A DNA stretch of 63,582 nucleotides, counting the filler, from Octopus bimaculoides (lineage: Eukaryota), in NCBI RefSeq assembly GCF_001194135.2. It is 6 parts of 6 records of this genome, joined end to end, with 100 filler letters (N's around TTAATTAATTAA, not from the genome) between each part and the next. Parts side by side here need not be neighbours in the genome. Positions count along the whole stretch, not along the records: positions 46,305 to 56,638 come from NC_068985.1; 5 more parts are not named here. One strand, written 5' to 3'. The notes under the pieces are model-generated. The model worked only from the letters and a program-made list of their open reading frames with translations, was not told the DNA's origin and did no database searches. The translations under genes and the position numbers were made by a program. Of the stretch, positions 31,894-56,638 are shown one piece after another (positions within the stretch are counted from its first letter, which is position 1; every line of letters begins with the position of its first letter).

Positions 31894-32261
31894 GTGAGTT
31901 TCTTCTCTGTCCTATATAATTATGTCCACATCATAGATTTTGCAATACCTTATGTTAAGAAAATGAATATCAAAGACACTAACAAAATAGAGAAATATCA
32001 GGACTTGTTTACAAAGATTAAGAGATTGTGGAAGACAAAGATGACCATTCTTCCTGTTATAATTGGTGCAATTGGAACAGTGCCCAGACTACTTACTTCA
32101 GTGGCCGAAGGATACAGAAACTGAGACATACATTGTTAAACTGCAGAAAAGTGCCATTATGTATTCTGCGACAATCTTAAATAAATTTCTTGAGATTTGT
32201 GGCGATTTGTTGTCACCAAACATTCCTTCTTATTAAATTAGCATGTTATGGCTTTTGCTTT

Positions 32262-32265
<4 letters not shown>
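31894..32265 (+). mobile_element. RLE LINE 3' fragment ending in (AAT)n
   Basis: IIDFAIP...KIEKYQDL..IKRLWK...ILPVIIGAIGTV; the 3' UTR runs into (AAT)~22. Confidence 0.85.
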
Positions 32266-32333
<68 letters not shown>

Positions 32334-32339
32334 TTAATT

Positions 32340-32730
32340 GAAAAAGAAAACAAACTATGCTGGATCATAGACATAGCATGTCCCAGCNNNNNNNNNNTGT
32401 CCCAGCTGCAACAAGGTATGCGATAAGGAAGAAATAAAAGTCGATAGATATGACAGGTTAGCTTGGGAGGTTAAGCAGTTGCGGTCGATGAAAAAGGTGG
32501 TAGTAGTACCAATAACTGTTGGAGCCCTGGAAACTGAGTAAAAAATCTTGAGAAGTACATGGAACAAATAGGGGCAGCAATAAATGTGGAGCACTTGCAG
32601 AAAACAGCACTGCTTGGAACCGCTCGAATACTCCGGATGGTGCTAGAAAAATAAGGTGTTACCTTAGTTCACTGGTAGTGAACAACTGGCACTGTAGTAC
32701 ATCTTCAGCGTTAGAAACTGTGCAAAGACA
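32340..32730 (+). mobile_element. Second RLE LINE 3' fragment directly downstream of the (AAT)n array
   Basis: CWIIDIACP...KVDRYDRLAWEVKQL...VVVPITVGALE...LQKTALLGTARILRMVLEK*; ends in AATAATAAT/(GAT)n. Confidence 0.85.
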
Positions 32731-33586
32731 AATAATAATGATGATGGTGATGATGATGATGAGGATGATGATGATAAGAGTAACGACGATGACGATGATG
32801 ATTTCGTATAAATACATACCGTAAGTTTGCAACTTAAAATAATTAGTACCAATGTGTACAAACCTCATTAGGCACTCATTAGTGTTAGCGCATTTCTTTG
32901 TGCCATAGCATGACATGTACCACTCCTCTTTAATGAGTAGATTCGCTGTACACAACGGCTTAATATGAGGGAGCGTGGAGCAACACCATTGAAAGGTCTC
33001 CCCCTAAATGGTCCTCAAATATGATTTGCTGGATAGAAATGACTGGCGATTTCATTAGATTATCAAAGACCGTATTTCTTTGATAATGGAATGCCTGTAG
33101 CAATGCAACTACTAAATCTGGTTTTAGAAACGCGTGAAAATCCGTTAAATATTGACGATAATAAAATATTTGGTGTGACATATTTAATCTAATGAAAAAT
33201 ATAAATTTCAGGTGAATTCCTGAGGGTATTCACGATAATCCAAAAAAGAATTTAACATCGTTATCATCATTGAAACATGTGGATGTTTCATCCGGCAAGA
33301 TAAAAAAATACTTTATACCATGGATATTAATGCTTTATTGTGACTTTCTACCAATAATATAATCGACATATATTCCTCAAACATTCTAGTGAGAACGCAA
33401 GCACGTCTATAAAACCTAAAAAATATTGTACGTGGGCGATTATGAAGTGAAAGTCAAGTATTGAGCACTCAGTACACTGTACATTACGTTGAAGGACCAC
33501 AAGCAAGTTTTAACAGAAACTTTAACTATAAGTTGCTCACCAATAAAGCGTACTTTATCTCCAATCTTTCTCATATTCATTCAATA

Positions 33587-33625
33587 CAGTAGTGCCTCGG
33601 TTTACAAACGCCTCTGATCAAGAAT
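33587..33625 (+). mobile_element. Possible solo Tigger-type TIR
   Basis: TA followed by CAGTAGTGCCTCGGTTTAC; no partner end found. Confidence 0.3.
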
Positions 33626-33633
33626 AAATCGTG

Positions 33634-33678
<45 letters not shown>

Positions 33679-34205
33679 AGTTTCAAACTGTTTAGAAAAA
33701 AATTAATTAAAAAAATATGTGAGCCAAACTGAATAGATACTATATATATAATACCCAACGTGTGTTTGTGTATATACTTTTGTGAGTAACATTTAAGCAT
33801 TTGAAACTGTTGAATATGTTCTACTTTACATGATTTACGTTCTAAATCATTCGACACGAGCTCTTATACATTTGACATCTGTTTGAGTCGTTATGTTTAT
33901 ATATTGTATTCAAAAGTTAATTCTGTTTCCCTTTTTGCTTCATAACGTTTCATTAACGGTTTTACGTTCTTGATAATCAAACTAATTCTCTCCTTTTTCT
34001 CGTTGGTAAATCTAATCAATATATGTGTATATAATACGCAGTGCTGTGTCGTCAATATATATATATATATATATATTTGTATTTACATTTATTCCATTAT
34101 TAATTATTTTACTTCATATGTTTCCCTATATTCCATTATTTTTATATTTAACTTGCTGGGAGGTATCATATATTCAACTTTAGACAATTTCCGTATTACA
34201 CTACA

Positions 34206-34249
<44 letters not shown>

Positions 34250-34365
34250 NNNNNNNNNNNNNNNNNNNNNNNNNNNNNNNNNNNNNNNNNNNNNNNNNNN
34301 NNNNNNNNNNNNNNNNNNNNNNNNNNNNNNNNNNNNNNNNNNNNNNNNNNNNNNNNNNNNNNNNN

Positions 34366-34403
<38 letters not shown>

Positions 34404-35725
34404 TTAAGCAGAACAAAAGCAAAAATAATTTGAAATTATTACAGATTGGAAATTCAGAAGTCAAGATGTACTGGTATCTCCACGTGTCATTACAAGCAAC
34501 ATTGTTCATAAGGAATTTTTACAGTGAATGTCAATTATAATGCTTATTATGTACATTCTGGAGCTTTTGCACGAAATGTGACGAATATGTTGTACACGTG
34601 CAACTTTTACGAAATTAAACCTTTGAAAATCTTAAGACAATATATATTACCTATCTGTAAGATCACATGCCCGTATGTAAATATGAATATATTTTGATAA
34701 TTTACATGTGCAAGATTTGTGAAATTTGGTAGACCATTTATTAAAGAAAATAACATAATGGCGAATAACAAGTGACTCATTGAATAGAACTTTCGTTTTG
34801 TACACACTAAAAGCAATCAAGCCTGTATAAATATACGAGGATTAATAAATATAATTTTCTTATTTCTCTTGTAATTTTGGTATTTTTCTTTACATATACT
34901 CCCAATAGCAACTTTCAACATGCACGTTTTCCAGCAATAACTCCAATTAGAAAAATCGAATATTGATACATACAAACCAAAATGTTCTAATTATCGCTAA
35001 GTCAAGTAAAACACCTGTTATCATTATTGTCGGTTCTGGTTCTCCAGGGACTTAATAAAATTACTCCAGATACAATGTTTATATACATGTTTACGTACAA
35101 TAGCAAAAATCAAGCTTAATATTATTAGTTTCTCCGCTACTACAGATAACTTTAACCTTCATAATCCCAATGTGAAGTTGTGAATTATACATAAAGGTTA
35201 GACGCACACATGCAGCGTCTGGTGAAACTTGGTTTCCACTATTATTAGGTAGATATCTGTTTTGTCTCCAGATTAGACCAGATTTGTAAGTGCGTCCCAG
35301 TACAACAATAAAGCACTGAACTTTGCCGAGAAGATAAAATACTTGCTGAAGTTTAATGATCCTTTCTACTATAAACACAAGACCTGAAATTTGTGGGGAG
35401 GGGTATAGTTGATCACATCGACGCCACTAATTGACTGTTACTTAATTTATTGACCCCAGTAAACAGTAAACGGTAAACGTAAGTTTATATTATTAGTTCT
35501 ACATATGTTTCGCCATTACAGTTGCTTGGGACACTGCCTTGGCTACCGAATACCTTTAATGTCCCTCGTACCTTAATGCAATAAGGTGTTCCCTGGCGAT
35601 TCATTCTATTTGAAAATCCAAATGCTCTTGGAACATTCAGTGCCAGGTACCAACAACCATGATGGTGAATCGTACGTAGAGACAAACGATATAAACTTAT
35701 GTTTATAGTAATTTCTTATATATAT

Positions 35726-36505
35726 ATCAAAATAAGCAACAGGATATCAAGTAATGATACAGTACGACCGTTTCCGACGGCTTCATTTAATTGAACAATG
35801 CAACCATTACATAAATTTAAATGCAGTACCATCTTCAGCCGCACAAATACATAAATAGAATTTTAACCAGTCGGATACATTAATATAATTTTTCTCATCT
35901 ACTTTAACAGAGCAAGAACATGGAAAAAATCCATGTTGTCTCTATTGTAGCTAAGAATAGACAACACTTCCAAGAATCACATGAAACCCATTAGGGTCAT
36001 AGCTTGTAAAGGATTGTAATTAATTTTCTAAATCCTTTATCTCTTTATCAACTACTAGATTTCCTCCCCGAGGAAAAGGGACACATATGATAATATTCAT
36101 GACCATGCCTATCCATGAGCTGTCAACTCACTCTTGCCCTTTATGCAAAACACACAGTCTGCTAGTCTTAGATTTAGTAGTTGATAAAGAGATAAATGAT
36201 TTAGAAATGAGTAACAATCCTTTACAAGCTATGACTCCAATACGCTTCATACGATTCTTGGAAGTGTAGTCTATTCCTAGCTACAATAGTGACAACATGA
36301 ATTTCTTCCATCTTCTTGCCCTGTTAAAGTAGTTGAGAAAAATTATAATAATGTGTCCGACTGGTTAAAATTCTATGTATTTATTTGAGCAGGGGAAGAT
36401 AGCACTGCATTTAAATTGATATAATGGTTGCATTGTTCAATTAAATGGTGCCGCTTGAAACGGTCGTACTGCATCACGATTTAATATCTATTTGCTTATT
36501 TCGAT
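35726..36505. mobile_element. Foldback/MITE-like element with ~335-bp imperfect inverted arms and ~110-bp spacer
   Basis: 35726-36061 aligns to the reverse complement of 36170-36505, e.g. CAGTACGACCGTTTC, CATTTAATTGAACAATGCAACCATTA, CACTTCCAAGAATC, TTTATCTCTTTATCAACTACTA. Confidence 0.8.
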
Positions 36506-36758
36506 TTTATTCACCTTACTTCGACCTGTGCGGATAATACCGGATTGACATGGTGCTTCAACTTAAGTACCTAATGGATCACAATTATTTTTTATCTTGC
36601 TCGACTAAAGGCAGTGTTCCAACATGGCCGCAGTCAATTAACTGAAACAAGTAAAAGAATAAAAGAATATAGGTGTGTGTGTATGTGTGTGTGTATGTGT
36701 GTGTGTGTACATAGGAGCAGGAGTGGCTGTGTGGTACGAGTCTTGCTTCCCAATCACG

Positions 36759-36798
<40 letters not shown>

Positions 36799-36847
36799 GT
36801 CTACATCTGTTTATCTATCAGGCTCTCTCTCTCTCTCTCTCTCTTGA

Positions 36848-36920
<73 letters not shown>

Positions 36921-37959
36921 CCATGCACAATAGGCCTCTGCTCAGTTTGTTTCTGCATTTGCCCGAGGAGCTCTACAAGGAGTGCGAACCCGACATCGCG
37001 TGGTTGCAGAACGAGGCTTTTCACCACACAGCCATGCCAGCATAAGTTGAGACCGAGGACGAGAAACTTCTGATACAAGCCGTATCAAATGAAAGAGATC
37101 CAACACAAAAGAAAGAGATCCAACACAAAAGAAAGGAAACAATAGATTGAAATGGACTATGGACTAAAATGAATTTATAATAGAGACCATCAAAAGACCG
37201 TATAAAGATATGTGTTTCTATTTAAAACCTAAATTAACCAAATGATAGCAAAATTAGAAATAATTCAAACAAAATACACAAATGTATTATTGTGTATAAC
37301 TAAATATGTATGTTAATTGTGTAAATTTAATTGTTGGAAAACAAATATATTAACAGATGAAATCCTTTTCCATTTGAAATTGTATACACTTCCATTTGAT
37401 ATAATTAAATGTTTTTAATTGAAAATGCGAATAATTGCTAAACATTTTATCACAGAAAAGATATTTTATATTGTTCTAAGATTCGAAGATTTTTAAAATT
37501 AAAATTTTTGAAAAATAGTATTTTTCCCGGTGGAAATAAGTAATCGAACTGTTTTAATGTTGAAATAATTATCTTTTGTTTGTTTCAACTTTAAGCTGCT
37601 TCCATTTTCAATAGTTTGGAAAAATGGTTAAATCATTTATTTATTTAAATTTACAAACGTTTTTTTCTAAATGTAATATAATCGTAGTATAATAGTGTAA
37701 AAATATGTATTTTAAACATTCAAGTAATAAAGCAATCTTTCCAAATACAACATTCCACATAGAATTTCTGGTTCTGTAAAGTCGTTTTGGGGTATACAAA
37801 AACTCCACTTGCATACTGGAAGAAACGGTTCACCGAGGACGCCAAAAACCCTCCCACGCTTTACAGGCGAAGTGCTCCAAGAGCAAACGTAAAATGTATA
37901 CAGGCCAAAATTTTGAAGTAATTAAATAAACGGTAAAACATTTACTTCATGAATACATT

Positions 37960-46163: not shown

Positions 46164-46384
46164 GTATCTATATATATGTCTATATATGTCTATATATATG
46201 TATANNNNNNNNNNNNNNNNNNNNNNNNNNNNNNNNNNNNNNNNNNNNTTAATTAATTAANNNNNNNNNNNNNNNNNNNNNNNNNNNNNNNNNNNNNNNN
46301 NNNNTATATATATATATGTACGTGTGTGTGTATATATATATATATGTACGTGTGTGTGTATATATATATATGTGTGTGTGTGTG

Positions 46385-46423
<39 letters not shown>

Positions 46424-46619
46424 GTGTGTGTGTGTGTATGTATATATGTGTGTGTGTATATATGTGTGTGTGTATATATATATATATAATAACATCCACC
46501 ACACAACTACCAACAACACCACCCATGACAATAGCAACCATATGCACAACACAAGCACTACCACCAACAACAACAACCACAATGATAATAACACTTTACA
46601 CTCTGTCTTCTACAGCCCT

Positions 46620-48881
46620 AACAACAAAACTTATGACATGACAAGGATCTCCCTCACAAACTCACCCTTTAACAAAAGGGTATGTATCCCACCCCAAATC
46701 GACAGTGAAACAGAAGCAAAGATCTCCTCAGCTAGAAATAGACTCCAACATATCTTAGACCGATACAACAAATCCACTAAAAAAAAAAAAGTGAGGAGGG
46801 GACCCACCAAATCAGCTCATCTGTTGACAGAGGCCTACATAAACTGAGACAGCGAATTAGGAACAGAGAATTAGTGTGCCTCCCTACGGACAAGTCTGGC
46901 AGACTGTCAATAGACAGCTGTCAGAACTATGTCCAAACCATGCAACAACACATCAGTAACATGAGAGAAGTTACACCACAAGAATGTGAAAACGCACACA
47001 TGGGAATGTGGTGCAACATACTCCAACCTACAAAAAGGACAGCACACAATTTCCAAGCTACCAACAACGACATTCCTTCACTATACGGGTTACGCAAAGA
47101 CCACAAACCTTACATAAACCCCCTGCCATGGGGCTTCCAACCAGACCAGTTTGTGGAGCAAATATCTCCAGCCACTATAGACTGTCCTACTTCCTCTCAC
47201 AGGTATTACGACCTCTCATAGAAATGTCTCCAGATGTTTATGTGAGTACGGAAGATCTCCTCAGTAAAATGAGTACTTGCAACCACTCCATCGACCTCAC
47301 AGGTTGTGTAGTGGGTAGTATGGATGTGATTTCACTCTACCCATCTATAGACATAGATTTTCCTGTGGAGATATGCATTCAGGTGATCTGTGAGAGTGAA
47401 GTGGAGTTCCACAAGGTCAACACGAGGGAACTGAGCCTCCTCCTCAGACTAAGCTATGACAGTAACTATTTAGATGACCATGACCTCAGTAGATTCTGCC
47501 CCACCAGGCCACAGAGGGGAAGACCACCCACCATCACTTCAGCAGTGAAAAAAAGCACCACTGAACGCTGGAGTGGTTGGACTGCACCCACCCAAAACCC
47601 TGAGAACAACAATCAGGTAAAGGAAATGATTGCTCACGCAATAGGGGCCAGCATAAAAACCACCTTGAAGAACCGCATAGTAAAGTTCAACAAAAAATTA
47701 TACATGCAGGGTTCAAGGTGCAGACATCGGCGTTGGTGTAGCTGGAGATGTGGCCGGCCTCTTCACGACCTGGTGGGACAAAACTCAAACATATGTTAGC
47801 AGAACAATCCACAACTCTTCTACTTTACAGCAGATATGTGGATGACATTAATATCATAGTTAGGACCAACTCTAGTGACGGTCATGTAGAAACAGAAAGG
47901 GACGTAATGGAGAGCATCCAGCAAATAGCTAACTCCGTCCACCAAAGTATCAAGGTAGCTATAGATTACCCGACTAAACACCCCAACAATAGGCTCCCGG
48001 TACTTGATANNNNNNNNNNTAACTCCGTCCACCAAAGTATCAAGGTAGCTATAGATTACCCGACTAAACACCCCAACAATAGGCTCCCGGTACTTGATAC
48101 TGAACTTTGGTTAGAGACTGTGAACAATAGAGTGCAGCTCCTCCACTCATTATATGAAACCCATAGCTTCAAAACATGTTGTTCACAAGAACTCAGCTTT
48201 GTCACACAGCATGAAAATTAGCAGACCTAGTTAGGATAATGAACAACATCTCCCCACTATGCGAACCCTATGAAATGAAAAAAACATATAATAGAACTTC
48301 ATGCACCACATGCAGTTCTCTGGATATGATCAGAAAGGTAGGGTTCGAGTGTACAGGGGAGCTAGAAAGAGGTTAGATAAGATTATAAGTAATGATACCA
48401 GTGGTACCTGCCCTAGATATAGAAACAAAGAATGGAATAGGATACAAAGAATTTGTGACAAAGCCAACAAGGTGAACACGTGGTATAAAACCGACAGATA
48501 TCAAGGAGTGATGTATGTAGAGGCCACAGCCCATGGAGAACTAGCGTGTAAGTTTAGAAAAGCTCTGAAGAGTCCAAACTCAACATTAAGATTGTTGAAA
48601 AGCCAGGGAACTCCATCAGATCACAACTATGTAGGACGTACCCCTTTGAGAACACCATATGTACCAATGATAACTGCATGGTATGTAGGATTAGCCCTGG
48701 CATTAACTGCAGAAATAGAAATGTAGTTTACAGCATAAAATGCGTGGAAGGTGTTTGTAAAGACCTGAATATGACATATATAGGTGAAACATCTAGGAGC
48801 ATTGCGGAACGGCTAAACGAACATATGAGACAATATGACGACAAAAAACAGTCCTCCATACTCTACCAGCATGGAGGCAAC
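46620..48881 (+). mobile_element. Penelope-like element with Naiad-type signatures (RT + C-terminal GIY-YIG), frameshifted and cut by a gap
   Basis: PTDKSGRL, YGLRKDHK, PTRPVCGA, SMDVISLYPSID, RGRPPTITS, RYVDD, IDYPTKHPNNRLPVLD, SGYD, WYKT. Then CxxxxCxxC-x7-C-x4-VVY-x3-CxxxxC-x6-YIGETSRS..ERLNEH. Confidence 0.88.
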
Positions 48882-49534
48882 NNNNNNNNNNNNNNNNNNN
48901 NNNNNNNNNNNNNNNNNNNNNNNNNNNNNNNNNNNNNNNNNNNNNNNNNNNNNNNNNNNNNNNNNNNNNNNNNNNNNNNNNNNNNNNNNNNNNNNNNNNN
49001 NNNNNNNNNNNNNNNNNNNNNNNNNNNNNNNNNNNNNNNNNNNNNNNNNNNNNNNNNNNNNNNNNNNNNNNNNNNNNNNNNNNNNNNNNNNNNNNNNNNN
49101 NNNNNNNNNNNNNNNNNNNNNNNNNNNNNNNNNNNNNNNNNNNNNNNNNNNNNNNNNNNNNNNNNNNNNNNNNNNNNNNNNNNNNNNNNNNNNNNNNNNN
49201 NNNNNNNNNNNNNNNNNNNNNNNNNNNNNNNNNNNNNNNNNNNNNNNNNNNNNNNNNNNNNNNNNNNNNNNNNNNNNNNNNNNNNNNNNNNNNNNNNNNN
49301 NNNNNNNNNNNNNNNNNNNNNNNNNNNNNNNNNNNNNNNNNNNNNNNNAACACACACACGCACACACAAGGAGACAGAGGTACATACATACATATACACA
49401 TACATACATAAAAATAAAAAAAACACAAATGCAGAATACATACATACATACATGCAAACACACATATATACATACACATACATACATATATACATATGCA
49501 CAGACATACATACACACATAGATGCATGCACAAG

Positions 49535-49755
49535 GTGGCGAGCTGGCAGAAACGTTAGCACGCTGGGCGAAATGCTTAGCGGTATTTCGTCTGCCGCTAC
49601 GTTCTGAGTTCAAATTCCGCCAAGGTCAACTTTGCCTTTCATCCTTTCGAGGTCGATTGAATAAGTACCAGTTATGCACTGGGGTTGATATAATCGACTT
49701 AATCTGTTTGACTTGTCCCCTGTGTGTAGCCCCTTGTGGGTAGTAAAGAAATAAC
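49535..49755 (+). mobile_element. SINE family A with alternative 3' tail
   Basis: Canonical head and body followed by TTAATCTGTTTG...CCCCTTGTGGGTAGTAAAGAAATAA. Confidence 0.85.
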
Positions 49756-50365
49756 ACATGCACAAAAACAAACAAAAGCAAAAACAACACAGCGTAAATA
49801 ATGGACAGTCAAGACTATTGAAAAGGTTGCAATACGCAACGAAAATTTTAGGAAAATAAAAATAAAAACATGTGGAAATTTTAACGGTGAGTGTGTTAAA
49901 TTTTAAGGCACAATAAGAAAATGACTCTCCCCAGACACAACAGTATATATATATATATATATATGTTCATCATACCATTTCTGTCATAGTTTTGTACATT
50001 TCTTATCGTTTTCTGTTGTACTGCACTATATATTCTATACATTTTGTAGAATGATAGATTAAGGATCTTTTTTTGTGAGTACTACCAGATTACTTGAATC
50101 CATATAGTGTGACTTAAATATCTCTATGTATGTATGTATGTATGTATGTATATCTTTAATTATATATATCATCATTTAACATCCATTTTCCATGCTGGCA
50201 TGGGTTGGATGGTTTGAAAGGAGCTGCCCAGATGAAGGTTAAGATTTGACATGTTAACATATACTTACTAAATAACAGTGAAATTAAATTCACATTGGTT
50301 TTGTGTGTGATTGTTTCTATTTAATCTGCTTCAAATTTAAAACGTGTTTTTGATGTTTTTTATAG

Positions 50366-50447
50366 ATCCGCATGGTCAATGATGTTAAAAGTGTTAAAAT
50401 GCGTGGATATGCTTTCATTGAATATGAACATGAGAGGGACATGCACT
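50366..50447 (+). CDS. SNRNP70: U1-70K coding exon (RRM, RNP1), equivalent to vertebrate exon 7; 82 nt
   Basis: TTTTTATAG|ATC...CACT|GTAAGT; encodes IRMVNDVKSVKMRGYAFIEYEHERDMH(S). Confidence 0.95.
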
Positions 50448-52142
50448 GTAAGTAGTCATTGCCTTCTCTTCACTTTGTCTCTTAGGTGTAGCATTTAGCT
50501 TTTTTGCTTTACTTGTTAGGCTGGATCTGTTTATTCTCTTTATTCAATAAACTTATGCATTTTTAAGTATACAAAGGGTTAATTGAATGCAATTTTAAAG
50601 GGAAATTACATAAATTGTTGGTGTTATTTCTGGCAAGTATATGTTCCTCCTCATATTTTGTTACCCCAATCCAATTTATATTTATTTTAAATGTTAGTAC
50701 TGTCGTTTTCTTCCAACTACTTGTCATTTCTGGTGCTAAACCTTTTTTGTTCTGTAAGGTCCGTAGACTTCACTTTCTAGTGAAAAAAAAAGACATACAA
50801 GTGAAGTATTTTGTAATGTATTGAAGGTAAATTGAATCCACTCATTAGCAAAACAAAAACAAAAACAAAAAAGTGACAAGTGATTTGTGAGGTAAGGTGC
50901 AAATTTTCCTGCAAGGTGACAGGACATTTGTGAGGTAAGATCCAAATCTTTCCACAGTGACTCAAGTGTTTAAATGCATATATGGTGAATCTGAGTTTGC
51001 AGGTAATTTATTTTTTGAAATATTTGTATTTTTTCACATGCAAAATATTTCAACATTTCACTCCTTTATCTGGTACTGTGTTAGGTTGTAGCTTTCTACA
51101 GTTAAATCATTTCTGTGAAATGTCCAGGTTAACAAGCACTATTTATTAATTTTGGAAATGACTTTTCTCCCATTATTTTTGCTTGTATTATCAGGAAAAA
51201 AAAACTGCCTCTTCTCATTCTAAACTTTGACACTGGAATGCTTGCAGTTTTGTAGAGAACTTAACATTGATTGTGCAATGAATTTGATCCTTTTCAGGTA
51301 TCTCTCTACTACATTTGTTATTGCTTGCATTTCAAATGCTTTGAACAAGTCTGAAATGAATTGGATGTGCATTTTTAAGATATGGAGAGTGGATTAGTAT
51401 GGGGTAGGACAAATTATATACCTATATGCATTAAAACAATAATCCAAAACTATTGGCATATGTGGCTTAAGTGTTAAATATAAATTGGTTGTAGATGAAG
51501 TTAATTAACTCCCAAACAGTCCATGCATTCTTTTTAGATTCAGTTACTCTAAAGAATATGCCATTTTTTGATTTGGTGAAGAGAGCTGATTGTAGTTGTT
51601 GTTGCAAAGATTACTTTGGAGTTGCTCAAAATTCATTTAGCACAAAGCCATGGGAGTCAGTGATACATTTTGGTCTATTTTGTTGCCTATGAAATTTCTA
51701 ATAGAAAAAGTGTCTTTTAACCCAATTAGTCTTTCTTTTCTCTTAGTTAAATTTAAGTTACATAACTATTTGTTAATTCTGATGGGTTTCAAATTGTTAG
51801 ATTTTTTTTCCTTTTAGATTATTGGAATTCTTTTGAAAGAAACCTTTCAATATATTTTTAGGTAGACTGTTTTCTACATTGCTATAATCAATCCAGTGTC
51901 AAATATTCTTTTGGGATATTAAGTCATATGCCTTTAAGCTATTGCTGTTAGCTTTCAAAAATTGAGCTTTGTGAGCACTGAGACTTTCACAATGTCAGTT
52001 TGGTTCAGGTAAGTTTTTATTTTGTACCTGAATTGACTGATACTTCTAGCTTCCAATAAGATTAGAGTCCGAGTAACATGGTTTGGTGCAGAGCGATTTG
52101 TTTCCCGCCTGCTAACCTGTTTCTCTATTATTTTTCCTACAG

Positions 52143-52242
52143 AGTGGTGAACGTTGTGGGCCCATGCGCACTATGTTGCCCTAACAAATCCAAAGTTGCT
52201 TGATCAAAAATATGGTGTCCAGTTAATAGGTTTGTATATTGG
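52143..52242 (+). other. Candidate alternative poison exon (7a-like) of snrnp70
   Basis: Branch point TGCTAAC, pyrimidine tract and CCTACAG| acceptor; donor TGG|GTAAGC. Splicing to the upstream exon creates T+AG = TAG. No transcript evidence available. Confidence 0.55.
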
Positions 52243-54108
52243 GTAAGCTCTTGGGTTAAAAAAATACATTAAAAAAAAGTGTTAAGACAAAAAAAATTGC
52301 TTAGAAATAGGTTTTATATCTGAATACATAGAATTTTGATAATTTAATGAGTTAAAGTAATTGTACTTCACACCTTATATAGATTTTCTACTTGAGATTT
52401 TGTAGAGCTTGTTATTATGCTTTGCATATTCTGTATTCAAAAGGATTTCAAATTTCTGTAATTTCTAACACTAGGGTAATTTAGAGATTAAAATTTTTGT
52501 TTTGATTTTTTTTTTCCTTTAATTTTTTTTGATATGATTTTTTTTTTTTGTGATTGTTGTAAGACAATCCGCTCAAGATTAAAGACTTCAACTGAAACTT
52601 TTTATTAGACTTTACAGAATCTGAAAGCAAGTACATAATATAGAAAATACATAGTAACTGAAATCTTAGATGCTTTTAAAAAGCTAATTTCATGATATTT
52701 TGTAGCTAGTTTTAATTTAAAAAAACTGTACTGATTAATCTGAAGCACCATAAAAAGGGTAACATCTGAAACATGTTCTTCAAGGTCTGTATGATTGTGG
52801 AGATTTGGCTGTCTCAAATAATTTATTTTGTTAAAGTAATTTTTTCTTTTATAAAGTATTTGTGTGGGTTTGATTAATAAGCTAGTTGGAGCCAACTTAT
52901 ATAGGTTGTTATACCAAAACTAGGTTTGTGTGTTGTGAATATATGTAGATGTTCATTTTTATGGTAGCTTCCAGGTAAGTCAGGTAAGTTCTCAAACTAT
53001 GGATAATGGAAGTAGACTGCAGAAATGGCCATTTATGCATGATGAGTCACCATTGCCAATCTCTCAAAATCCATTTAGGGAAGGGACCCTCTTCTATCAC
53101 ATTTTTTAGTGCCGTAAGTGAAAAACTTTTTATAATTACTGTTTTCTTCATGTAAATCAGTGCATGTAGTTTATTGATTCATTACGTTAAAAATAAAATA
53201 TGCATACAGAAGGTAAGTAATTGGGGCTTCTGAAGCTGTATGCATTCTTTCTTTGAGATTTTAAATTGTTCTTAAGTTGGGCATTATTTGTTTTATCACT
53301 GATAGTTTTCATATATTTATCTTTATTTCTTTACTCGGAAACAATATTTGATGTTTTCATCAGTCGTCCTAACAGTTGATAGGTTTGTTTGTAGTTTTGA
53401 CTGTTTTAATGAATTTCATGGATTAAGCTTCATTGTTTGAGTTTAATGTTATAAAGGGTAATCATTTGGTTTTTATGCTTGGTTATTTGAGAAATTTTCT
53501 AGTTTCGTTTTAAATCTTTGCTCTGTCATTTCTTTGAGTACTAGTATTTAGTTATTTCTCCTCTACCTCAGGAAGCAATTATACTTTTCATTATATGAGA
53601 TTTTATGTTTTGTGTTAGAAATTGTATGCATTGGTAAGTATATTTTCTTAGAATACATAAATTTTACAGCTTCTAAGATGTAGTGTTTTTTGATCTTTAT
53701 GGCAGTGTTAGGTTTTAACTTTTTGGTTTAAATATATCTGAGAGGTTTTCAGTTTTTCTATCTGATCTATACATGTTAACAACTCTTGATCTTATATATC
53801 TACTATTAATAATTTTGCTTTGGTTTCCTTAAAAGCTCTGTTAATATTTCATGAAGCTACATTTGTGAAAATTTTAGCAAGCTTAACCAACAGTTCTACC
53901 AGATTTTCTACTTCTTGTATTCTGCTGTATTCTATTGTATTACATTGATCTGGTTTGGCTATTTACTGTGACCATTAATGGATGCAGACTATCACAGAAG
54001 CTGTAAATATATACCTCCATTTCATTTTGCATGAATCCTTACGCACCTAGCTATGCTAGGACTTTGTTGTTTTCAATAATAGTATTATTAATTTATTCAT
54101 TTCACCAG

Positions 54109-54210
54109 CTGCTTACAAACATGCTGATGGTAGAAAGATTGATGGGCGCAGAGTACTTGTTGATGTTGAAAGGGGACGTACAGTTAAGGGATGGCGGCCA
54201 CGTCGACTAG
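54109..54210 (+). CDS. SNRNP70: U1-70K coding exon, equivalent to vertebrate exon 8; 102 nt
   Basis: CACCAG|CT...CTAG|GTTCGT; encodes (S)[33 protein letters not shown](G). Confidence 0.97.
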
Positions 54211-54298
54211 GTTCGTATAATTTTATTTAGAGAGCAAATCACTGTTTTATATCGATTCATGAAATTAATTTTCCCTTTTCGTTTTCAATATACTGTAG

Positions 54299-54386
54299 GT
54301 GGTGGTCTAGGCGGTACCAGAAAAGGTGGGCCAGAAGAAAATACAAGGTTTTCTGGTAGAGATGAGTTTAATCCTGGTCGAGATGG
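54299..54386 (+). CDS. SNRNP70: U1-70K coding exon, equivalent to vertebrate exon 9; 88 nt
   Basis: CTGTAG|GT...GATGG|GTGAGT; encodes (G)GGLGGTRKGGPEENTRFSGRDEFNPGRD(G). Confidence 0.95.
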
Positions 54387-54689
54387 GTGAGTTCTATTTG
54401 TTCATAATTTGTTTCCTTGTCACTCCCTGTTGAATTTTCTGGTGTCATAGTTACAAAGTTATGTCCTAAATTTTGTTAGCTGTATAATTACCATGTAAAA
54501 TAACTTTTTATCACTTAAAATTACATCAATTTGAACTGGTACTTAATAATACATTTTCATACGATTTTATGGTAAAATTATTCTACTTTACAAAACTTTG
54601 GCTTTTGATAAAATTTATTTGTTTTTTGTTTTTGTTTTTTCTTTTGCATGAGTCTGAAAATTTATTTCATTTCTCTTTCATGTGCATAG

Positions 54690-54919
54690 TTACCGAGATG
54701 AACGCACTGGTCGAGAAAGATCTCGCAGTCGAGAAAGAGATCGTGCTGGAGGTGCTGGTGGTGGTGCTGGTATTGGTGGCAGTGGTGGTGGGGCTGGTAG
54801 ACGGAGGAGCAGGAGTAGAGAGAGGAGGAGGAGTAGGAGCAGAGAAAGAGGAGGCCGTCTTCGAAGCCGCAGCCGTGATCGTAGAAGGAGTAGAGATAGA
54901 GAAGAAAAAGTATCTGAAG
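54690..54919 (+). CDS. SNRNP70: U1-70K RS/RD/RE- and Gly-rich exon; 230 nt
   Basis: GCATAG|T TAC CGA...GAA G|GTATGT; the frame is continuous with both flanking exons. Confidence 0.9.
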
Positions 54920-55214
54920 GTATGTGTATGTATGTGCATGCTATGCATAAAATTAGGTCAATGGTATGTTGGAAGCCTGTCAGATAGACTGTACATGTTA
55001 TTAAAAAATCCAACCTCGTGCTGATTCTGCCTGAGAATTACATTAAGGGTACAAGTGTCTATTCTGTATTAAATATTGCACAGATGAGGAGATGACAAGG
55101 GACCCAAACTTCTGGTGGCTTGCTGTGCTTGAGAAGACGCGACAAGCTAAGTGGTTGTTCTAGCATGCAGGCATGTCCCCTGCATCCCTCTTCAGCTGAG
55201 TGATCCTAATCTTG

Positions 55215-55460
55215 AGGGCTCGTGGGTGCTGTAAACCCATAAAAAGCACATGTGCTGGTGCCATATCAAAGCATGCATGCTGATGCTGCGTAAAAACACC
55301 CAGTTCCTTCTGTAAAGTGGTTGGCATTAGGAAGAGCATCCAGCCATAGAAACTATGCCAAAACAGACATGGAGCCCTTGCAGCTCTTAAGCTGGCCAGT
55401 TCCTGTCAAACCGTCCTACCTATGCCTTCATGAAAAATGGACATTAAATGATGGTGACTT
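55215..55460 (+). mobile_element. Decayed SINE/RTE-tail fragment inside the last snrnp70 intron
   Basis: TTGGCATTAGGAAGAGCATCCAGCCATAGAAAC...GTCAAACCGTCC...GGACATTAAATGATGG; related tails at 50170-50230 (-) and 27080-27185. Confidence 0.65.
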
Positions 55461-55607
55461 TGTCTGTAATTGAATCAGAAGGTAGTCCAGTTGATTAAAC
55501 TGGAAAGTTTGTCAAAACCAATGACAAATTCATATTGCTGCTTCTTTCTTTTTTTATGTATGCAAAAAATATTGCTTGAACTTTTTTTCTTTTAATGCTT
55601 ACTCTAG

Positions 55608-56035
55608 GAGAAGAAGATATTCGCATAAAAGAACGTAAGCGAAGACGTAGTCGGTCACGAGACCGGCGGCGGAGCAGATCCAGGGAGCGCAAGAGTAGAG
55701 GGAGTCGGAGAAGCCGGAGTCGAGAGCGTCGCAGGTCCAGAGAAAGGGGAAGAGCTGGAGAAAAGCTTGAACCTAATGCTGAATCAGTACCACCACCACC
55801 AGTTCCTGCATATGATGATGAAGCAATGATACATAGAGAAATCAAGCAAGAACCTATTGATCCTGGATATGATATTCACCCAAATTACTCACAAATGGGT
55901 ATAGCTGGAGTACCAAGTGAACAAAATGCTCACTATATGTCAAATGGCGGCCAAGGACCATCACCATCTAATACTCAGTCTTTACCTCCAGATCATCCTT
56001 TGGAGGATAGGTATGAAGATTACAATGAAGACTAG
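55608..56035 (+). CDS. SNRNP70: U1-70K terminal coding exon (second RS block and acidic/Pro-rich tail)
   Basis: ACTCTAG|GA GAA GAA...; phase matches the upstream exon; ends YEDYNED*. Confidence 0.9.
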
Positions 56036-56525
56036 CTGTATTATTAATTTACCTTAATTGAAATGAGTTGTAATGTTGATTCCGTATATTTGTATAACTT
56101 GCTTCAGCTGAACATTTCAGACTGGGCTGTTCATCTGATACCTTCATTCTCTGAATTTTAAATGTCCCTTTATATTTTTCCTGTATCATTTGCCTAATCA
56201 TTCCTTCATGCCTTAACATTAGAAGGTTTCTAATATAAATAACATGATATTGTTTGACAATATCTTTATATCTGAGTGGTAAATATTATTGTTACAGTTT
56301 GTCTTTCATGTAGATTACATTTTAATGCTATTGTTTCTGAGTAAGATGATTAGATAATCTTATACATCTAGAACAGTATTTCTGTCATAAAGCTGGATGT
56401 TAATCTTTTATATATAGTAGAAAGTTGATTTGTACAGCTTTTTTATTAGAAACAAAGAAATATATTAAGCTTTAACTGTTGCGAAGCTAAAGAGTAGGTA
56501 TTTTAAAAGCTGCATGTATAGTTGC

Positions 56526-56556
<31 letters not shown>

Positions 56557-56585
56557 CATACACACACACACACATATATATATAT

Positions 56586-56638
<53 letters not shown>

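What the first reader, a model, noticed from the sequence alone, without database searches (positions are those of the whole stretch)
50820..53640. Cluster of consensus 5' splice sites (U1 binding sites) inside the U1-70K intron
Seen: three exact CAG|GTAAGT (52006-52014, and a tandem pair at 52972-52980 and 52981-52989), AAG|GTAAGT (53210), TTG|GTAAGT (53631), GAG|GTAAGG (50889) and GAG|GTAAGA (50932), the last two within a duplicated 14-mer ATTTGTGAGGTAAG, plus CAG|GTAATT (51000) and AAG|GTAAAT (50824). Three perfect 9-mers in 3.7 kb should be far above chance. Known: vertebrate exon 7a activation depends on downstream cryptic 5' splice sites bound by U1 snRNP. Inference: these are decoy sites that sense U1 snRNP level and promote poison-exon use or intron retention.
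Basis: partly seen in the sequence, partly recalled or inferred. Interest (0 to 1): 0.75.

Follow-up and report, generated by a model that had tools for sequence, protein, structure and literature searches.

The report
Conserved decoy splice sites in U1-70K intron
One intron of the octopus gene for the U1-70K splicing protein carries an array of perfect but unused splice-donor motifs, kept since octopuses and cuttlefish diverged, around an ancient "poison exon" that humans share; it most likely lets the U1 splicing particle limit its own production.

Summary
Every listed motif is at its stated coordinate, on the sense strand of the 3,661-nt intron 50448-54108 of Octopus bimaculoides U1-70K. 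Three exact CAGGTAAGT are found against 0.014 expected. GGTAAG occurs 8 times against 0.6 expected, and never on the antisense strand. Strong donor motifs are about nine times denser than in the other 33 kb of the same gene.

The motifs are under selection. They recur in the same order in Argonauta and in Sepia, sometimes as islands in otherwise unalignable sequence.

They flank a roughly 270-nt block that is 90% identical between Octopus and Sepia. This block holds a poison exon: an alternative 3' splice site at 52142/52143 that creates an immediate TAG. The core of that cluster aligns with the human, pufferfish, oyster and annelid sequences, so it is the true orthologue of the vertebrate exon 7a sites.

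Cuttlefish RNA-seq contigs join exon 7 to this 3' splice site and then run unspliced through the downstream consensus motifs.

U1 binding, U1 sensing and feedback are inferred, not shown. The verdict is a lophotrochozoan elaboration of a known vertebrate mechanism.

The parts
50366..50447 (+). U1-70K exon encoding [27 protein letters not shown] (taken as the counterpart of human exon 7). It ends in phase 1 (CAC T), with donor ACT|GTAAGT.
   Evidence: Translation. PDB match to human U1-70K residues 132-215, E=3e-40.
50448..54108 (+). The regulatory intron, 3,661 nt and 30% GC. An intron is at the same codon position in octopods, Sepia, oyster, Owenia, Glandiceps and Takifugu.
50824..50832 (+). 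AAGGTAAAT, an upstream pseudo-donor. It is conserved in Octopus species and Argonauta.
50870..50950 (+). Old 43-nt tandem duplication. Each copy carries TGTGAG|GTAAG (GAGGTAAGG at 50889-50897, GAGGTAAGA at 50932-50940). Both donor cores are kept in Argonauta, and Sepia has AAGGTAAGG and AAGGTAATT.
51000..51008 (+). CAGGTAATT pseudo-donor, present in all four cephalopods.
51993..52042 (+). Predicted hairpin whose 5' arm contains the consensus CAGGTAAGT (52006-52014). The 3' arm, UACCUGAAUUGACUGA, pairs with UCAGUU..GUUCAGGUA. The site lies 137 nt upstream of the poison 3' splice site.
   Evidence: Predicted energy -18.8 kcal/mol, z=-3.65. The same fold is predicted in Sepia (z=-3.4) and Argonauta (z=-2.3). 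The sequence is almost invariant, so there is no covariation proof.
51996..52256 (+). Core conserved block, 90% identical between Octopus and Sepia and nearly invariant among Octopus, Argonauta and Sepia.
   Evidence: blastn hit 51984-52277, E=2e-92. Alignment A1. No Rfam family matches it.
52112..52142 (+). Branch-point-like CTAAC (52112-52116), a pyrimidine tract and CAG: the alternative (poison) 3' splice site.
   Evidence: Invariant in the cephalopods. The orthologous Sepia site is the acceptor in RNA contigs L009, L014, L016 and L018.
52143..52242 (+). Poison or decoy exon: 100 nt to the GTAAGC donor, or 87 nt to the GTTTGT donor. Joining it to exon 7 reads CAC T|AG, an immediate stop after His157.
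   Evidence: Direct reading of the sequence. Sepia contigs read CAC TAA at the junction, and 157-aa products end in ...ERDMH.
52227..52248 (+). Donor cluster of the poison exon, TAG|GTTT|GTATATTGG|GTAAGC. It is the orthologue of vertebrate cryptic sites A/B/C.
   Evidence: The core A-GGTT-GTAT is invariant in Octopus, Sepia, oyster, Owenia, Takifugu and the human sequence targeted by the decoy-exon morpholino of PMC7373989.
52934..53160 (+). Second conserved block, 73% identical to Sepia. It holds the head-to-tail CAGGTAAGT CAGGTAAGT (52972-52989) and the invariant GCCGTAAGT (53111-53119).
   Evidence: Across alignment A3, which also covers the 53210 site, motif columns are 35/36 identical between Octopus and Sepia, against 165/305 for the other columns. 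The sites are left unspliced in Sepia RNA contig L009.
53210..53218 (+). AAGGTAAGT, kept as [AG]AGGTAAGT in all four cephalopods while its flanks are unalignable with Sepia. In Octopus it sits in the loop of a 10-bp hairpin (about 53200-53245).
   Evidence: (inverted repeat I5).
53631..53639 (+). TTGGTAAGT, present in Octopus species and Sepia. It was not found in Argonauta.
54109..54210 (+). Next constitutive exon, encoding (S)[34 protein letters not shown] (taken as the counterpart of human exon 8).

Best explanation
The motifs are conserved pseudo-5' splice sites, that is, landing sites for the 5' end of U1 snRNA. They belong to an unproductive-splicing switch in the U1-70K gene.

The core of the switch is ancient and shared with vertebrates. 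It is an alternative 3' splice site (52142/52143) that brings a stop codon directly after His157, followed within 87-100 nt by a cluster of one weak and one strong donor (52227-52248).

In cephalopods this core is surrounded by extra, near-perfect U1 sites. Oyster and an annelid show a similar excess of strong sites, though at non-alignable positions.

Most likely mechanism:
1. U1 snRNP bound at the poison exon's donor cluster defines that exon and activates its 3' splice site, as in human cells.
2. The isoform made this way keeps the rest of the intron.
3. The perfect donors in that retained part (52972/52981, 53111, 53210, 53631) hold U1 without completing splicing. This keeps the RNA unspliced, and probably nuclear and unstable.
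4. Productive U1-70K mRNA therefore falls when functional U1 snRNP is plentiful and rises when it is scarce.

The upstream sites (50824-51008, and the hairpin-embedded 52006) are removed together with the first half of the intron. They probably tune how exon 7's donor is paired.

Shown here: the sequence features, their conservation, use of the 3' splice site in cuttlefish, and non-use of the downstream donors in cuttlefish. Inferred: U1 occupancy, nuclear retention or decay, and feedback.
For: - Enrichment on the sense strand only, against shuffles and against 33 kb of the same gene.
- The sites have the same order and identity in O. sinensis, O. vulgaris, Argonauta and Sepia.
- Over alignments A1 and A3, motif columns are 53/54 identical between Octopus and Sepia, against 422/628 for the other columns.
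- Site 53210 is an island in unalignable sequence.
- The poison exon block is 90% identical between Octopus and Sepia.
- The core of its donor cluster is invariant in the oyster, annelid, pufferfish and human morpholino-target sequences.
- Four RNA-seq contigs from four runs join exon 7 to the alternative 3' splice site. Contig L009 then runs more than 2 kb colinear with the genome, through TGGGTAAGC, the tandem CAGGTAAGT pair and GAGGTAAGT.
- A separate product (P0134) reads from the 3' end of the intron into spliced downstream exons.
- Published mechanism in vertebrates: the alternative 3' splice site needs the adjacent 5' splice sites and intact U1 snRNP, and the rest of intron 7 stays unspliced (PMC3798272). 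Blocking the decoy donors lowers intron retention (PMC7373989).
- According to the titles and abstract openings returned by the literature search, intact consensus 5' splice-site motifs in unspliced RNA cause nuclear retention that depends on U1-70K (PMC4380460, PMC9074902).
Against: - There is no Octopus RNA evidence. The transcript evidence comes from a cuttlefish about 96% identical to S. pharaonis, whose species I could not verify.
- There is no binding or perturbation data in any invertebrate.
- The extra consensus sites are not enriched in pufferfish or in a hemichordate, so the vertebrate experiments say nothing directly about them.
- Half of the listed sites lie upstream of the poison exon, where the exon-definition logic does not apply.
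- The RNA contigs could partly reflect nuclear intermediates rather than a stable isoform.
Confidence: 0.6

Rival explanations
1. The motifs are genuine, regularly used donors of several unannotated cassette exons. Each would give an NMD-targeted mRNA, so the sites act by being spliced and not as decoys.
For: They have perfect donor sequence. Human sites A and B are used at low level when NMD is blocked. Any exon included here carries a stop: reading into the intron gives CAC TGT AAG TAG.
Against: Cuttlefish contigs run straight through four of the sites. Apart from the poison exon, no conserved 3' splice site with a pyrimidine tract precedes the sites. Conservation upstream of 52006 and 52972 is only 12-40 nt. 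Two donors 9 nt apart are not needed for a cassette exon.
Confidence: 0.15
2. The sites protect the transcript. U1 bound along an AT-rich intron suppresses premature cleavage and polyadenylation (telescripting), with no role in feedback.
For: Enrichment is on the sense strand only. An AATAAA (53192) lies 18 nt upstream of AAGGTAAGT in Octopus and Argonauta.
Against: The other 33 kb of introns in the same gene, with similar composition, lack the enrichment. Poly(A) hexamers are already depleted on the sense strand: 6 against 16 antisense. The sites cluster around the poison exon. The AATAAA is absent in Sepia.
Confidence: 0.1
3. The sites are recursive splice sites (AG|GTAAGT ratchet points) that remove the intron stepwise.
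For: Several sites read YAG|GTAAGT: TTCAG|GTAAGT at 52006, TCCAG|GTAAGT at 52972 and TTGCAG|GTAATT at 51000.
Against: The AG is not what is conserved. Argonauta has CTG|GTAAGT and CGG|GTAAGT at two of these sites. Other conserved sites are TTG|, TGG| and GCC|GTAAG. The intron is only 3.7 kb. The sites persist unspliced in RNA contigs.
Confidence: 0.03
4. The cluster is chance, a compositional effect, or a by-product of local duplication or a repeat element.
For: Two of the site pairs arose by tandem duplication.
Against: No shuffle out of 2,000 reaches the observed counts. The antisense strand has none. The duplications predate the octopod-cuttlefish split and both copies kept the donor core. 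No repeat family covers the sites within the intron.
Confidence: 0.02

Closest known systems
Vertebrate SNRNP70 (U1-70K) intron 7 switch: exon 7a alternative 3' splice site plus regulatory cryptic 5' splice sites A, B, C (Rosel-Hillgartner et al. 2013, PMC3798272)
   Same: - Same gene, with the intron at the same codon position as in the pufferfish orthologue.
[quoted passage not shown]
- A cluster of one weak and one strong donor lies directly downstream, with a shared sequence core.
[quoted passage not shown]
   Different: - Octopus has in addition about eight near-perfect donor motifs spread over 2.8 kb on both sides of the poison exon. They include an exact head-to-tail pair and one in a predicted hairpin.
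- Pufferfish shows no such excess.
- The published work describes conservation among vertebrates only.
- U1 and U1C dependence is untested here.
Decoy exons that promote intron retention (Parra et al. 2018; PMC7373989, includes SNRNP70 intron 7)
   Same: - A highly conserved non-coding exon deep in a large intron.
- Retention mainly of the downstream part of the intron.
- The donor region of the decoy is the functional target, and the human morpholino target aligns with Octopus 52218-52242.
   Different: - Decoy activity has not been assayed in any invertebrate.
- The additional consensus donors outside the decoy exon are not part of the published model.
USSE, the U11 snRNP-binding splicing enhancer in the U11-48K and U11/U12-65K genes (cited in PMC5473595)
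   Same: - A snRNP component gene carries a conserved copy of its own snRNP's 5' splice-site motif.
- That motif is bound but not spliced, and it drives unproductive isoforms as negative feedback (abstract opening seen).
- From my own knowledge, not checked here: the USSE copies are in tandem, which would parallel the tandem CAGGTAAGT pair.
   Different: - The USSE uses U12-type donors and U11. Here the motif is the U2-type consensus for U1.
- This is an analogy, not homology.
Intact 5' splice-site motif as a nuclear retention and decay signal (PMC4380460; PMC9074902)
   Same: - A consensus donor motif sits in an RNA that is not spliced at that motif.
- The published titles and abstract openings state that retention depends on U1-70K itself. 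That would make the retained half-intron self-referential.
   Different: - The published work used human reporter and intronic-polyadenylated mRNAs.
- Localisation and stability of the cephalopod isoform are unknown.
Ultraconserved pseudo-5' splice sites (Ding et al. 2026, PMC13100119)
   Same: Intronic donor-like motifs that are never spliced, are conserved across animals, and regulate a neighbouring alternative exon through the U1 core.
   Different: - In that paper a single site acts as a silencer of an essential exon in ENOX1.
- SNRNP70 does not occur in the paper's main text.
- Here there is an array of sites in the U1-70K gene itself.

Membership tests
SNRNP70 intron-7 unproductive-splicing switch (exon 7a plus regulatory 5' splice sites) | The host gene is U1-70K and the intron is at the homologous position in the RRM. 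| tested here: met
   The protein matches human U1-70K residues 132-215, E=3e-40. The intron splits ...ERDMH|SAYKHADG in phase 1 in Octopus, Sepia, oyster, Owenia, Glandiceps and Takifugu. The human intron 7 decoy sequence aligns inside it. The human exon 7/8 junction itself was not checked.
SNRNP70 intron-7 unproductive-splicing switch (exon 7a plus regulatory 5' splice sites) | An alternative 3' splice site inside the intron introduces a premature stop. | tested here: met
   CTAAC, a pyrimidine tract and CAG at 52112-52142 give CAC T|AG. The orthologous site is the acceptor in four cuttlefish RNA contigs, which read CAC TAA. Octopus RNA itself was not examined.
SNRNP70 intron-7 unproductive-splicing switch (exon 7a plus regulatory 5' splice sites) | [quoted passage not shown] | tested here: met
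   TAG|GTTT|GTATATTGG|GTAAGC at 52227-52248, 87-100 nt downstream. Its core is invariant across six taxa including the human morpholino target.
SNRNP70 intron-7 unproductive-splicing switch (exon 7a plus regulatory 5' splice sites) | [quoted passage not shown] | tested here: met
   Contig L009 is colinear with the Sepia genome for 2,064 nt after the junction. L014, L016 and L018 behave likewise. P0134 reads from the intron's 3' end into exon 8. This was seen in cuttlefish only.
SNRNP70 intron-7 unproductive-splicing switch (exon 7a plus regulatory 5' splice sites) | [quoted passage not shown] | not testable with these tools
   This needs pull-down, CLIP, antisense blocking or knock-down.
SNRNP70 intron-7 unproductive-splicing switch (exon 7a plus regulatory 5' splice sites) | The isoform is degraded or not translated, and U1-70K protein level responds (feedback). 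| not testable with these tools
   This needs NMD inhibition and protein measurement.
Decoy-exon-mediated intron retention | A conserved non-coding exon inside a retained intron, whose splice sites are needed for retention. | tested here: inconclusive
   Conservation and downstream retention are met. The requirement for the splice sites was not tested.
Recursive splice sites | A 3' splice-site AG juxtaposed to GTAAGT and conserved as such, in a long intron, and used in stepwise splicing. | tested here: not met
   The AG is lost in Argonauta at two sites (CTG|, CGG|). Other conserved sites lack AG (TTG|, TGG|, GCC|). The intron is 3.7 kb. The sites persist in RNA contigs.
USSE (U11-binding enhancer) | Tandem U12-type 5' splice-site motifs (defining feature stated from my own knowledge). 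| tested here: not met
   The motifs are the U2-type consensus CAGGTAAGT. The resemblance is functional only.
5' splice-site-motif nuclear retention element | An intact consensus donor motif is present in a processed RNA that is not spliced at that motif. | tested here: met
   The tandem CAGGTAAGT pair and GAGGTAAGT lie within contig L009, in which all upstream introns are removed.
5' splice-site-motif nuclear retention element | The RNA is retained in the nucleus or degraded in a U1-70K/ZFC3H1-dependent way. | not testable with these tools
   This needs fractionation or imaging after perturbation.

The most novel reading that the evidence does not exclude
The U1-70K pre-mRNA of cephalopods, and more broadly of lophotrochozoans, is a multi-site gauge of free U1 snRNP. 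It combines:
- a bilaterian-old poison exon, whose donor-cluster core is unchanged from octopus to human, which would make it one of the oldest intronic regulatory elements known;
- a lineage-specific array of perfect U1 sites, including one gated by a hairpin that mimics the U1 5' end and one exact head-to-tail pair.

Graded occupancy of the array would decide between productive splicing and a half-spliced RNA that is held in the nucleus. The holding pathway itself would need U1-70K.
Probability: 0.3. Interest if true: 0.75.

Novelty: new variant of a known kind. Interest (0 to 1): 0.55.

Why it matters
Self-regulation of the U1 snRNP through SNRNP70 intron 7 has been described in vertebrates only, at least in the literature I could search. 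Two consequences would follow if the reading here is right.

First, the poison exon and its donor cluster would date back to the bilaterian ancestor. That gives a very small, precisely aligned set of nucleotides (A-GGTT-GTAT followed by GGTAAG) to test in any animal.

Second, cephalopods, an oyster and an annelid have independently kept many additional perfect donors that are not spliced. This offers a natural experiment on how a consensus 5' splice site is kept silent, and on whether unspliced U1 sites act as retention signals in vivo.

The result is also a practical caution for gene prediction in molluscs. These perfect donors are not exon ends.

Tried and rejected
- **Scallop and abalone loci.** Look-ups for Pecten maximus and Haliotis asinina returned no DNA because the annotated gene range exceeds 100 kb.
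- **Human fragment search.** Searching with the 84-aa human fragment returned only short products without usable genomic contigs. I then used a carp protein to reach fish genomes and took Takifugu.
- **Human intron.** It could not be fetched. The only human nucleotides used are the morpholino target printed in PMC7373989.
- **Octopus poison-isoform product.** There is therefore no Octopus transcript evidence.
- **Cross-phylum blastn.** It finds only the 24-nt donor-cluster core. The consensus sites of oyster, Owenia and Glandiceps cannot be aligned to the Octopus ones, so I treat them as analogous rather than orthologous.
- **Rfam.** At permissive thresholds it gave only low-complexity microRNA-like hits outside the conserved blocks. 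An intronic snoRNA or other known RNA is rejected.
- **RNAalifold on the core block.** It found no compensatory changes because the sequences are nearly invariant. The hairpin therefore remains a prediction.
- **Bacterial promoter/terminator scan.** It is uninformative here.
- **Annotated isoforms.** The X1/X2 difference (439 against 426 aa) lies at the N-terminus and is unrelated to this intron.
- **Repeated TAG|GTTTGT.** The word recurs at 52921 and 53380 (families D10 and D12). The 52921 copy is not conserved in Argonauta or Sepia; the 53380 copy was not checked. I did not count either.
Full report
**What is in the piece.** The usable piece (46305-56638) is identical to Octopus bimaculoides chromosome CM046605.1, with 0 mismatches in 7,267 compared bases. 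It holds the 3' half of the U1-70K (SNRNP70) gene on the + strand. The exons are 50366-50447, 54109-54210, 54299-54386, 54690-54919 and 55608-56033, all with canonical splice sites. The product matches human U1-70K residues 132-215 at E=3e-40. The finding lies in the 3,661-nt intron 50448-54108 (30% GC). This intron interrupts the RRM between ...EYEHERDMH and SAYKHADG... in phase 1.

In 2,000 dinucleotide-preserving shuffles of the intron:
- exact CAGGTAAGT: 3 observed, 0.014 expected, no shuffle reaching 3;
- at least 8 of 9 matches: 5 observed, 0.32 expected;
- GGTAAG: 8 observed, 0.62 expected;
- antisense strand: none of these.

The tool's own test agrees. Shuffles are a weak null, so I also used the rest of the same gene as a control. 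In O. vulgaris, donor-like sites of at least 10 bits occur at 1.37 per kb in this intron and at no more than 0.15 per kb in the other 33.6 kb. The contrast is similar in Argonauta (1.56 against 0.22) and Sepia (0.62 against 0.06). Two pairs of sites come from duplications: the 9-nt head-to-tail pair, and a 43-nt tandem repeat. That leaves about seven independent sites.

**The motifs are conserved as motifs.** I retrieved the orthologous intron from O. sinensis, O. vulgaris, Argonauta hians and Sepia pharaonis. The same series appears in the same order in all of them:
- a proximal group (AAGGTAAAT, two [AG]AGGTAAG[AG], CAGGTAATT);
- a consensus site (CAGGTAAGT, or CTGGTAAGT in Argonauta);
- TGGGTAAGC;
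- the head-to-tail pair (exact in Sepia, CAGGTAAGTCGGGTAAGT in Argonauta);
- GCCGTAAGT;
- [AG]AGGTAAGT;
- TTGGTAAGT in Octopus and Sepia only.

Over alignments A1 and A3 together, motif columns are 53/54 identical between Octopus and Sepia, against 422/628 for the other columns. The site at 53210 is an island in sequence that otherwise cannot be aligned with Sepia. Chance, repeats and recent duplication are therefore excluded.

**What the motifs surround.** blastn between the Octopus and Sepia introns finds one outstanding block, 51984-52277, at 90% identity (E=2e-92), and a second, 52934-53143, at 73%. The first block is nearly invariant among the three cephalopod genera. It reads as a complete splicing unit. 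It starts with the consensus donor at 52006. It then has a CTAAC branch-point-like motif, a long pyrimidine tract and CAG at 52142. Next come about 100 nt of sequence. It ends with TAG|GTTT|GTATATTGG|GTAAGC at 52227-52248. Joining exon 7 (CAC T) to 52143 (AG...) gives an immediate TAG. No Rfam family matches the block.

**Transcript evidence from a cuttlefish.** The protein database holds 157-aa products that end exactly at ...ERDMH. Their contigs are assemblies of public RNA-seq runs, about 96% identical to S. pharaonis. In four contigs from four runs, all upstream introns are removed. Exon 7 is joined to the predicted alternative 3' splice site (L004 position 32218 to 37425), which reads CAC TAA. 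The RNA then stays colinear with the genome, for 2,064 nt in L009. That stretch includes TGGGTAAGC, both copies of the tandem CAGGTAAGT and GAGGTAAGT, none of them spliced. Another product (P0134) reads from the last 70 nt of the intron into correctly spliced downstream exons. Other contigs stop exactly at the end of exon 7, as expected at an assembly-graph branch. The poison 3' splice site is therefore used in a cephalopod. The downstream half of the intron is then retained, and the perfect donors in it behave as pseudo-sites. I could not obtain the equivalent Octopus contigs.

**Relation to the vertebrate system.** Rosel-Hillgartner et al. (PMC3798272) showed the following in human cells:
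- An alternative 3' splice site in SNRNP70 intron 7 introduces a stop.
- Its use needs the adjacent cryptic 5' splice sites A, B and C and intact U1 snRNP with U1C.
- The remainder of the intron stays largely unspliced.
- The result is feedback on U1-70K.

Conservation was shown in mouse and zebrafish. Parra et al. treat the same element as a decoy exon "conserved from fish to mammals" and print a morpholino against its donors (PMC7373989). The reverse complement of that morpholino is GTTGGTATAAGG|GTTT|GTATCATGG.

The Takifugu intron, at the same codon position, reads TATAATGG|GTTTGTATGATGG|GTAAGA downstream of a 3' splice site that gives a stop. Oyster reads GATAG|GTTTGTATGGGAGTG|GTAAGA. The annelid Owenia reads GATAG|GTTGGTATATAG|GTGGGTTG|GTAAGA. 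Octopus reads TTAATAG|GTTTGTATATTGG|GTAAGC. The core A-GGTT-GTAT is invariant in all six taxa. In the papers I could search, conservation beyond vertebrates is not described.

**What is particular to Octopus and its relatives.** The perfect 9-mers are additional to that shared core. An excess of strong sense-strand donor motifs over shuffles is significant in five taxa and absent in two.

| Taxon | Sense sites | Antisense sites | Excess over shuffles |
|---|---|---|---|
| Octopus | 9 | 0 | significant |
| Argonauta | 10 | 1 | significant |
| Sepia | 13 | 6 | significant |
| Oyster | 5 | 1 | significant |
| Owenia | 7 | 0 | significant |
| Takifugu | 4 | 2 | p=0.52 |
| Glandiceps (hemichordate) | 8 | 4 | p=0.74 |

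The oyster has three CAGGTAAGA copies about 33 nt apart. The array thus looks like a lophotrochozoan elaboration, with positional conservation demonstrable only within cephalopods.

Two details may matter mechanistically.
- The site at 52006 lies in the 5' arm of a predicted 17-bp hairpin. Its 3' arm (UACCUGAAUUGACUGA) pairs with the donor much as U1 would. The predicted energy is -18.8 kcal/mol (z=-3.65), and the fold recurs in Sepia and Argonauta. Without sequence variation it cannot be verified by covariation.
- A strong donor-like motif lies 40-142 nt upstream of the poison 3' splice site in Octopus, Owenia, oyster and Takifugu.

**Mechanism.** I commit to the following, and mark which steps are inferred.
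1. U1 snRNP binds the poison exon's donor cluster and defines the exon. This activates the 3' splice site at 52142. The step is inferred from sequence homology with the tested human element.
2. The resulting RNA keeps the downstream half-intron. This is shown in cuttlefish.
3. The perfect donors there bind U1 but do not complete splicing. This keeps the half-intron in place and marks the RNA for nuclear retention and decay. The step is inferred. By their titles and abstract openings, PMC4380460 and PMC9074902 report that intact consensus 5' splice-site motifs do this in human cells in a U1-70K-dependent way.
4. The output is less productive U1-70K mRNA when functional U1 is abundant.

The role of the upstream sites is the least clear. 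I give the overall picture a confidence of 0.6. I am much more confident (about 0.9) that the motifs are selected U1-type sites belonging to this regulatory intron.

**Rivals.**
- *Regularly used donors of hidden cassette exons.* This is disfavoured by the read-through contigs and by the lack of conserved acceptors.
- *Telescripting.* This is disfavoured because the other introns of the gene lack the excess, and because poly(A) hexamers are already rare on the sense strand (6 against 16 antisense).
- *Recursive splicing.* This fails its defining test, because the AG is not the conserved part.
- *Chance.* This is excluded.

**Verdict.** This is a real, conserved array of pseudo-donors in the U1-70K autoregulatory intron. 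No functional test exists for any invertebrate. I rate it a new variant of a known kind, with interest 0.55.

Noticed in passing
window 51993-52042: The consensus donor CAGGTAAGT (52006) is predicted to be paired in a 17-bp hairpin with UACCUGAAUUGACUGA. That arm resembles the U1 5' end. The fold recurs in Sepia and Argonauta, but there is no covariation to prove it.
   Followed up: partly
window 53191-53254: An inverted repeat (TGCATACAG / CTGTATGCA) places AAGGTAAGT (53210) in a hairpin loop. An AATAAA at 53192 lies 18 nt upstream. Both features are shared with Argonauta and absent in Sepia.
   Followed up: partly
L007 3272, L008 27959, L019 40531, window 52006: In pufferfish, oyster, annelid and Octopus, a strong donor-like motif lies 40-142 nt upstream of the poison exon's 3' splice site. 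Its meaning is unknown.
   Followed up: no
L008 28512-28587; L020 10221-10241: The oyster has three CAGGTAAGA copies spaced 35 and 32 nt apart, downstream of its poison exon. The hemichordate Glandiceps has CGGGTAAGT twice, 12 nt apart. Tandem donor motifs therefore recur in this intron in distant animals.
   Followed up: partly
window 46600-48885: The upstream intron holds a decayed retroelement. It has frame-shifted ORFs with an RT-like YVDD motif and a GIY-YIG endonuclease domain (Pfam E=9e-5). That combination suggests a Penelope-like element. It is interrupted by assembly gaps.
   Followed up: partly
window 47938-48101: The same ~77-nt sequence (TAACTCCGTCCACCAAAG...GGTACTTGATA) stands on both sides of a 10-N gap. 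This looks like an assembly artefact rather than a biological repeat.
   Followed up: no
window 49535-49745 and 55090-55440: Two GC-richer stretches within AT-rich introns look like interspersed repeats (SINE-like). ARAGORN finds no tRNA gene, and the two stretches are not related to each other.
   Followed up: partly
window 50448-54108: Poly(A) signal hexamers (AATAAA or ATTAAA) are rarer on the sense strand (6) than on the antisense strand (16) of this 70% A+T intron.
   Followed up: no
window 46305-46490, 49350-49530, 56520-56638: Long TA/TG/CA microsatellites bound the piece and the assembly gap. They produce spurious sub-threshold microRNA hits in Rfam.
   Followed up: yes
L010-L013, L015, L017: Several RNA-seq contigs end exactly at the last base of exon 7. 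This is what an assembly graph does at a branch between two junctions (7-8 and 7-7a).
   Followed up: partly
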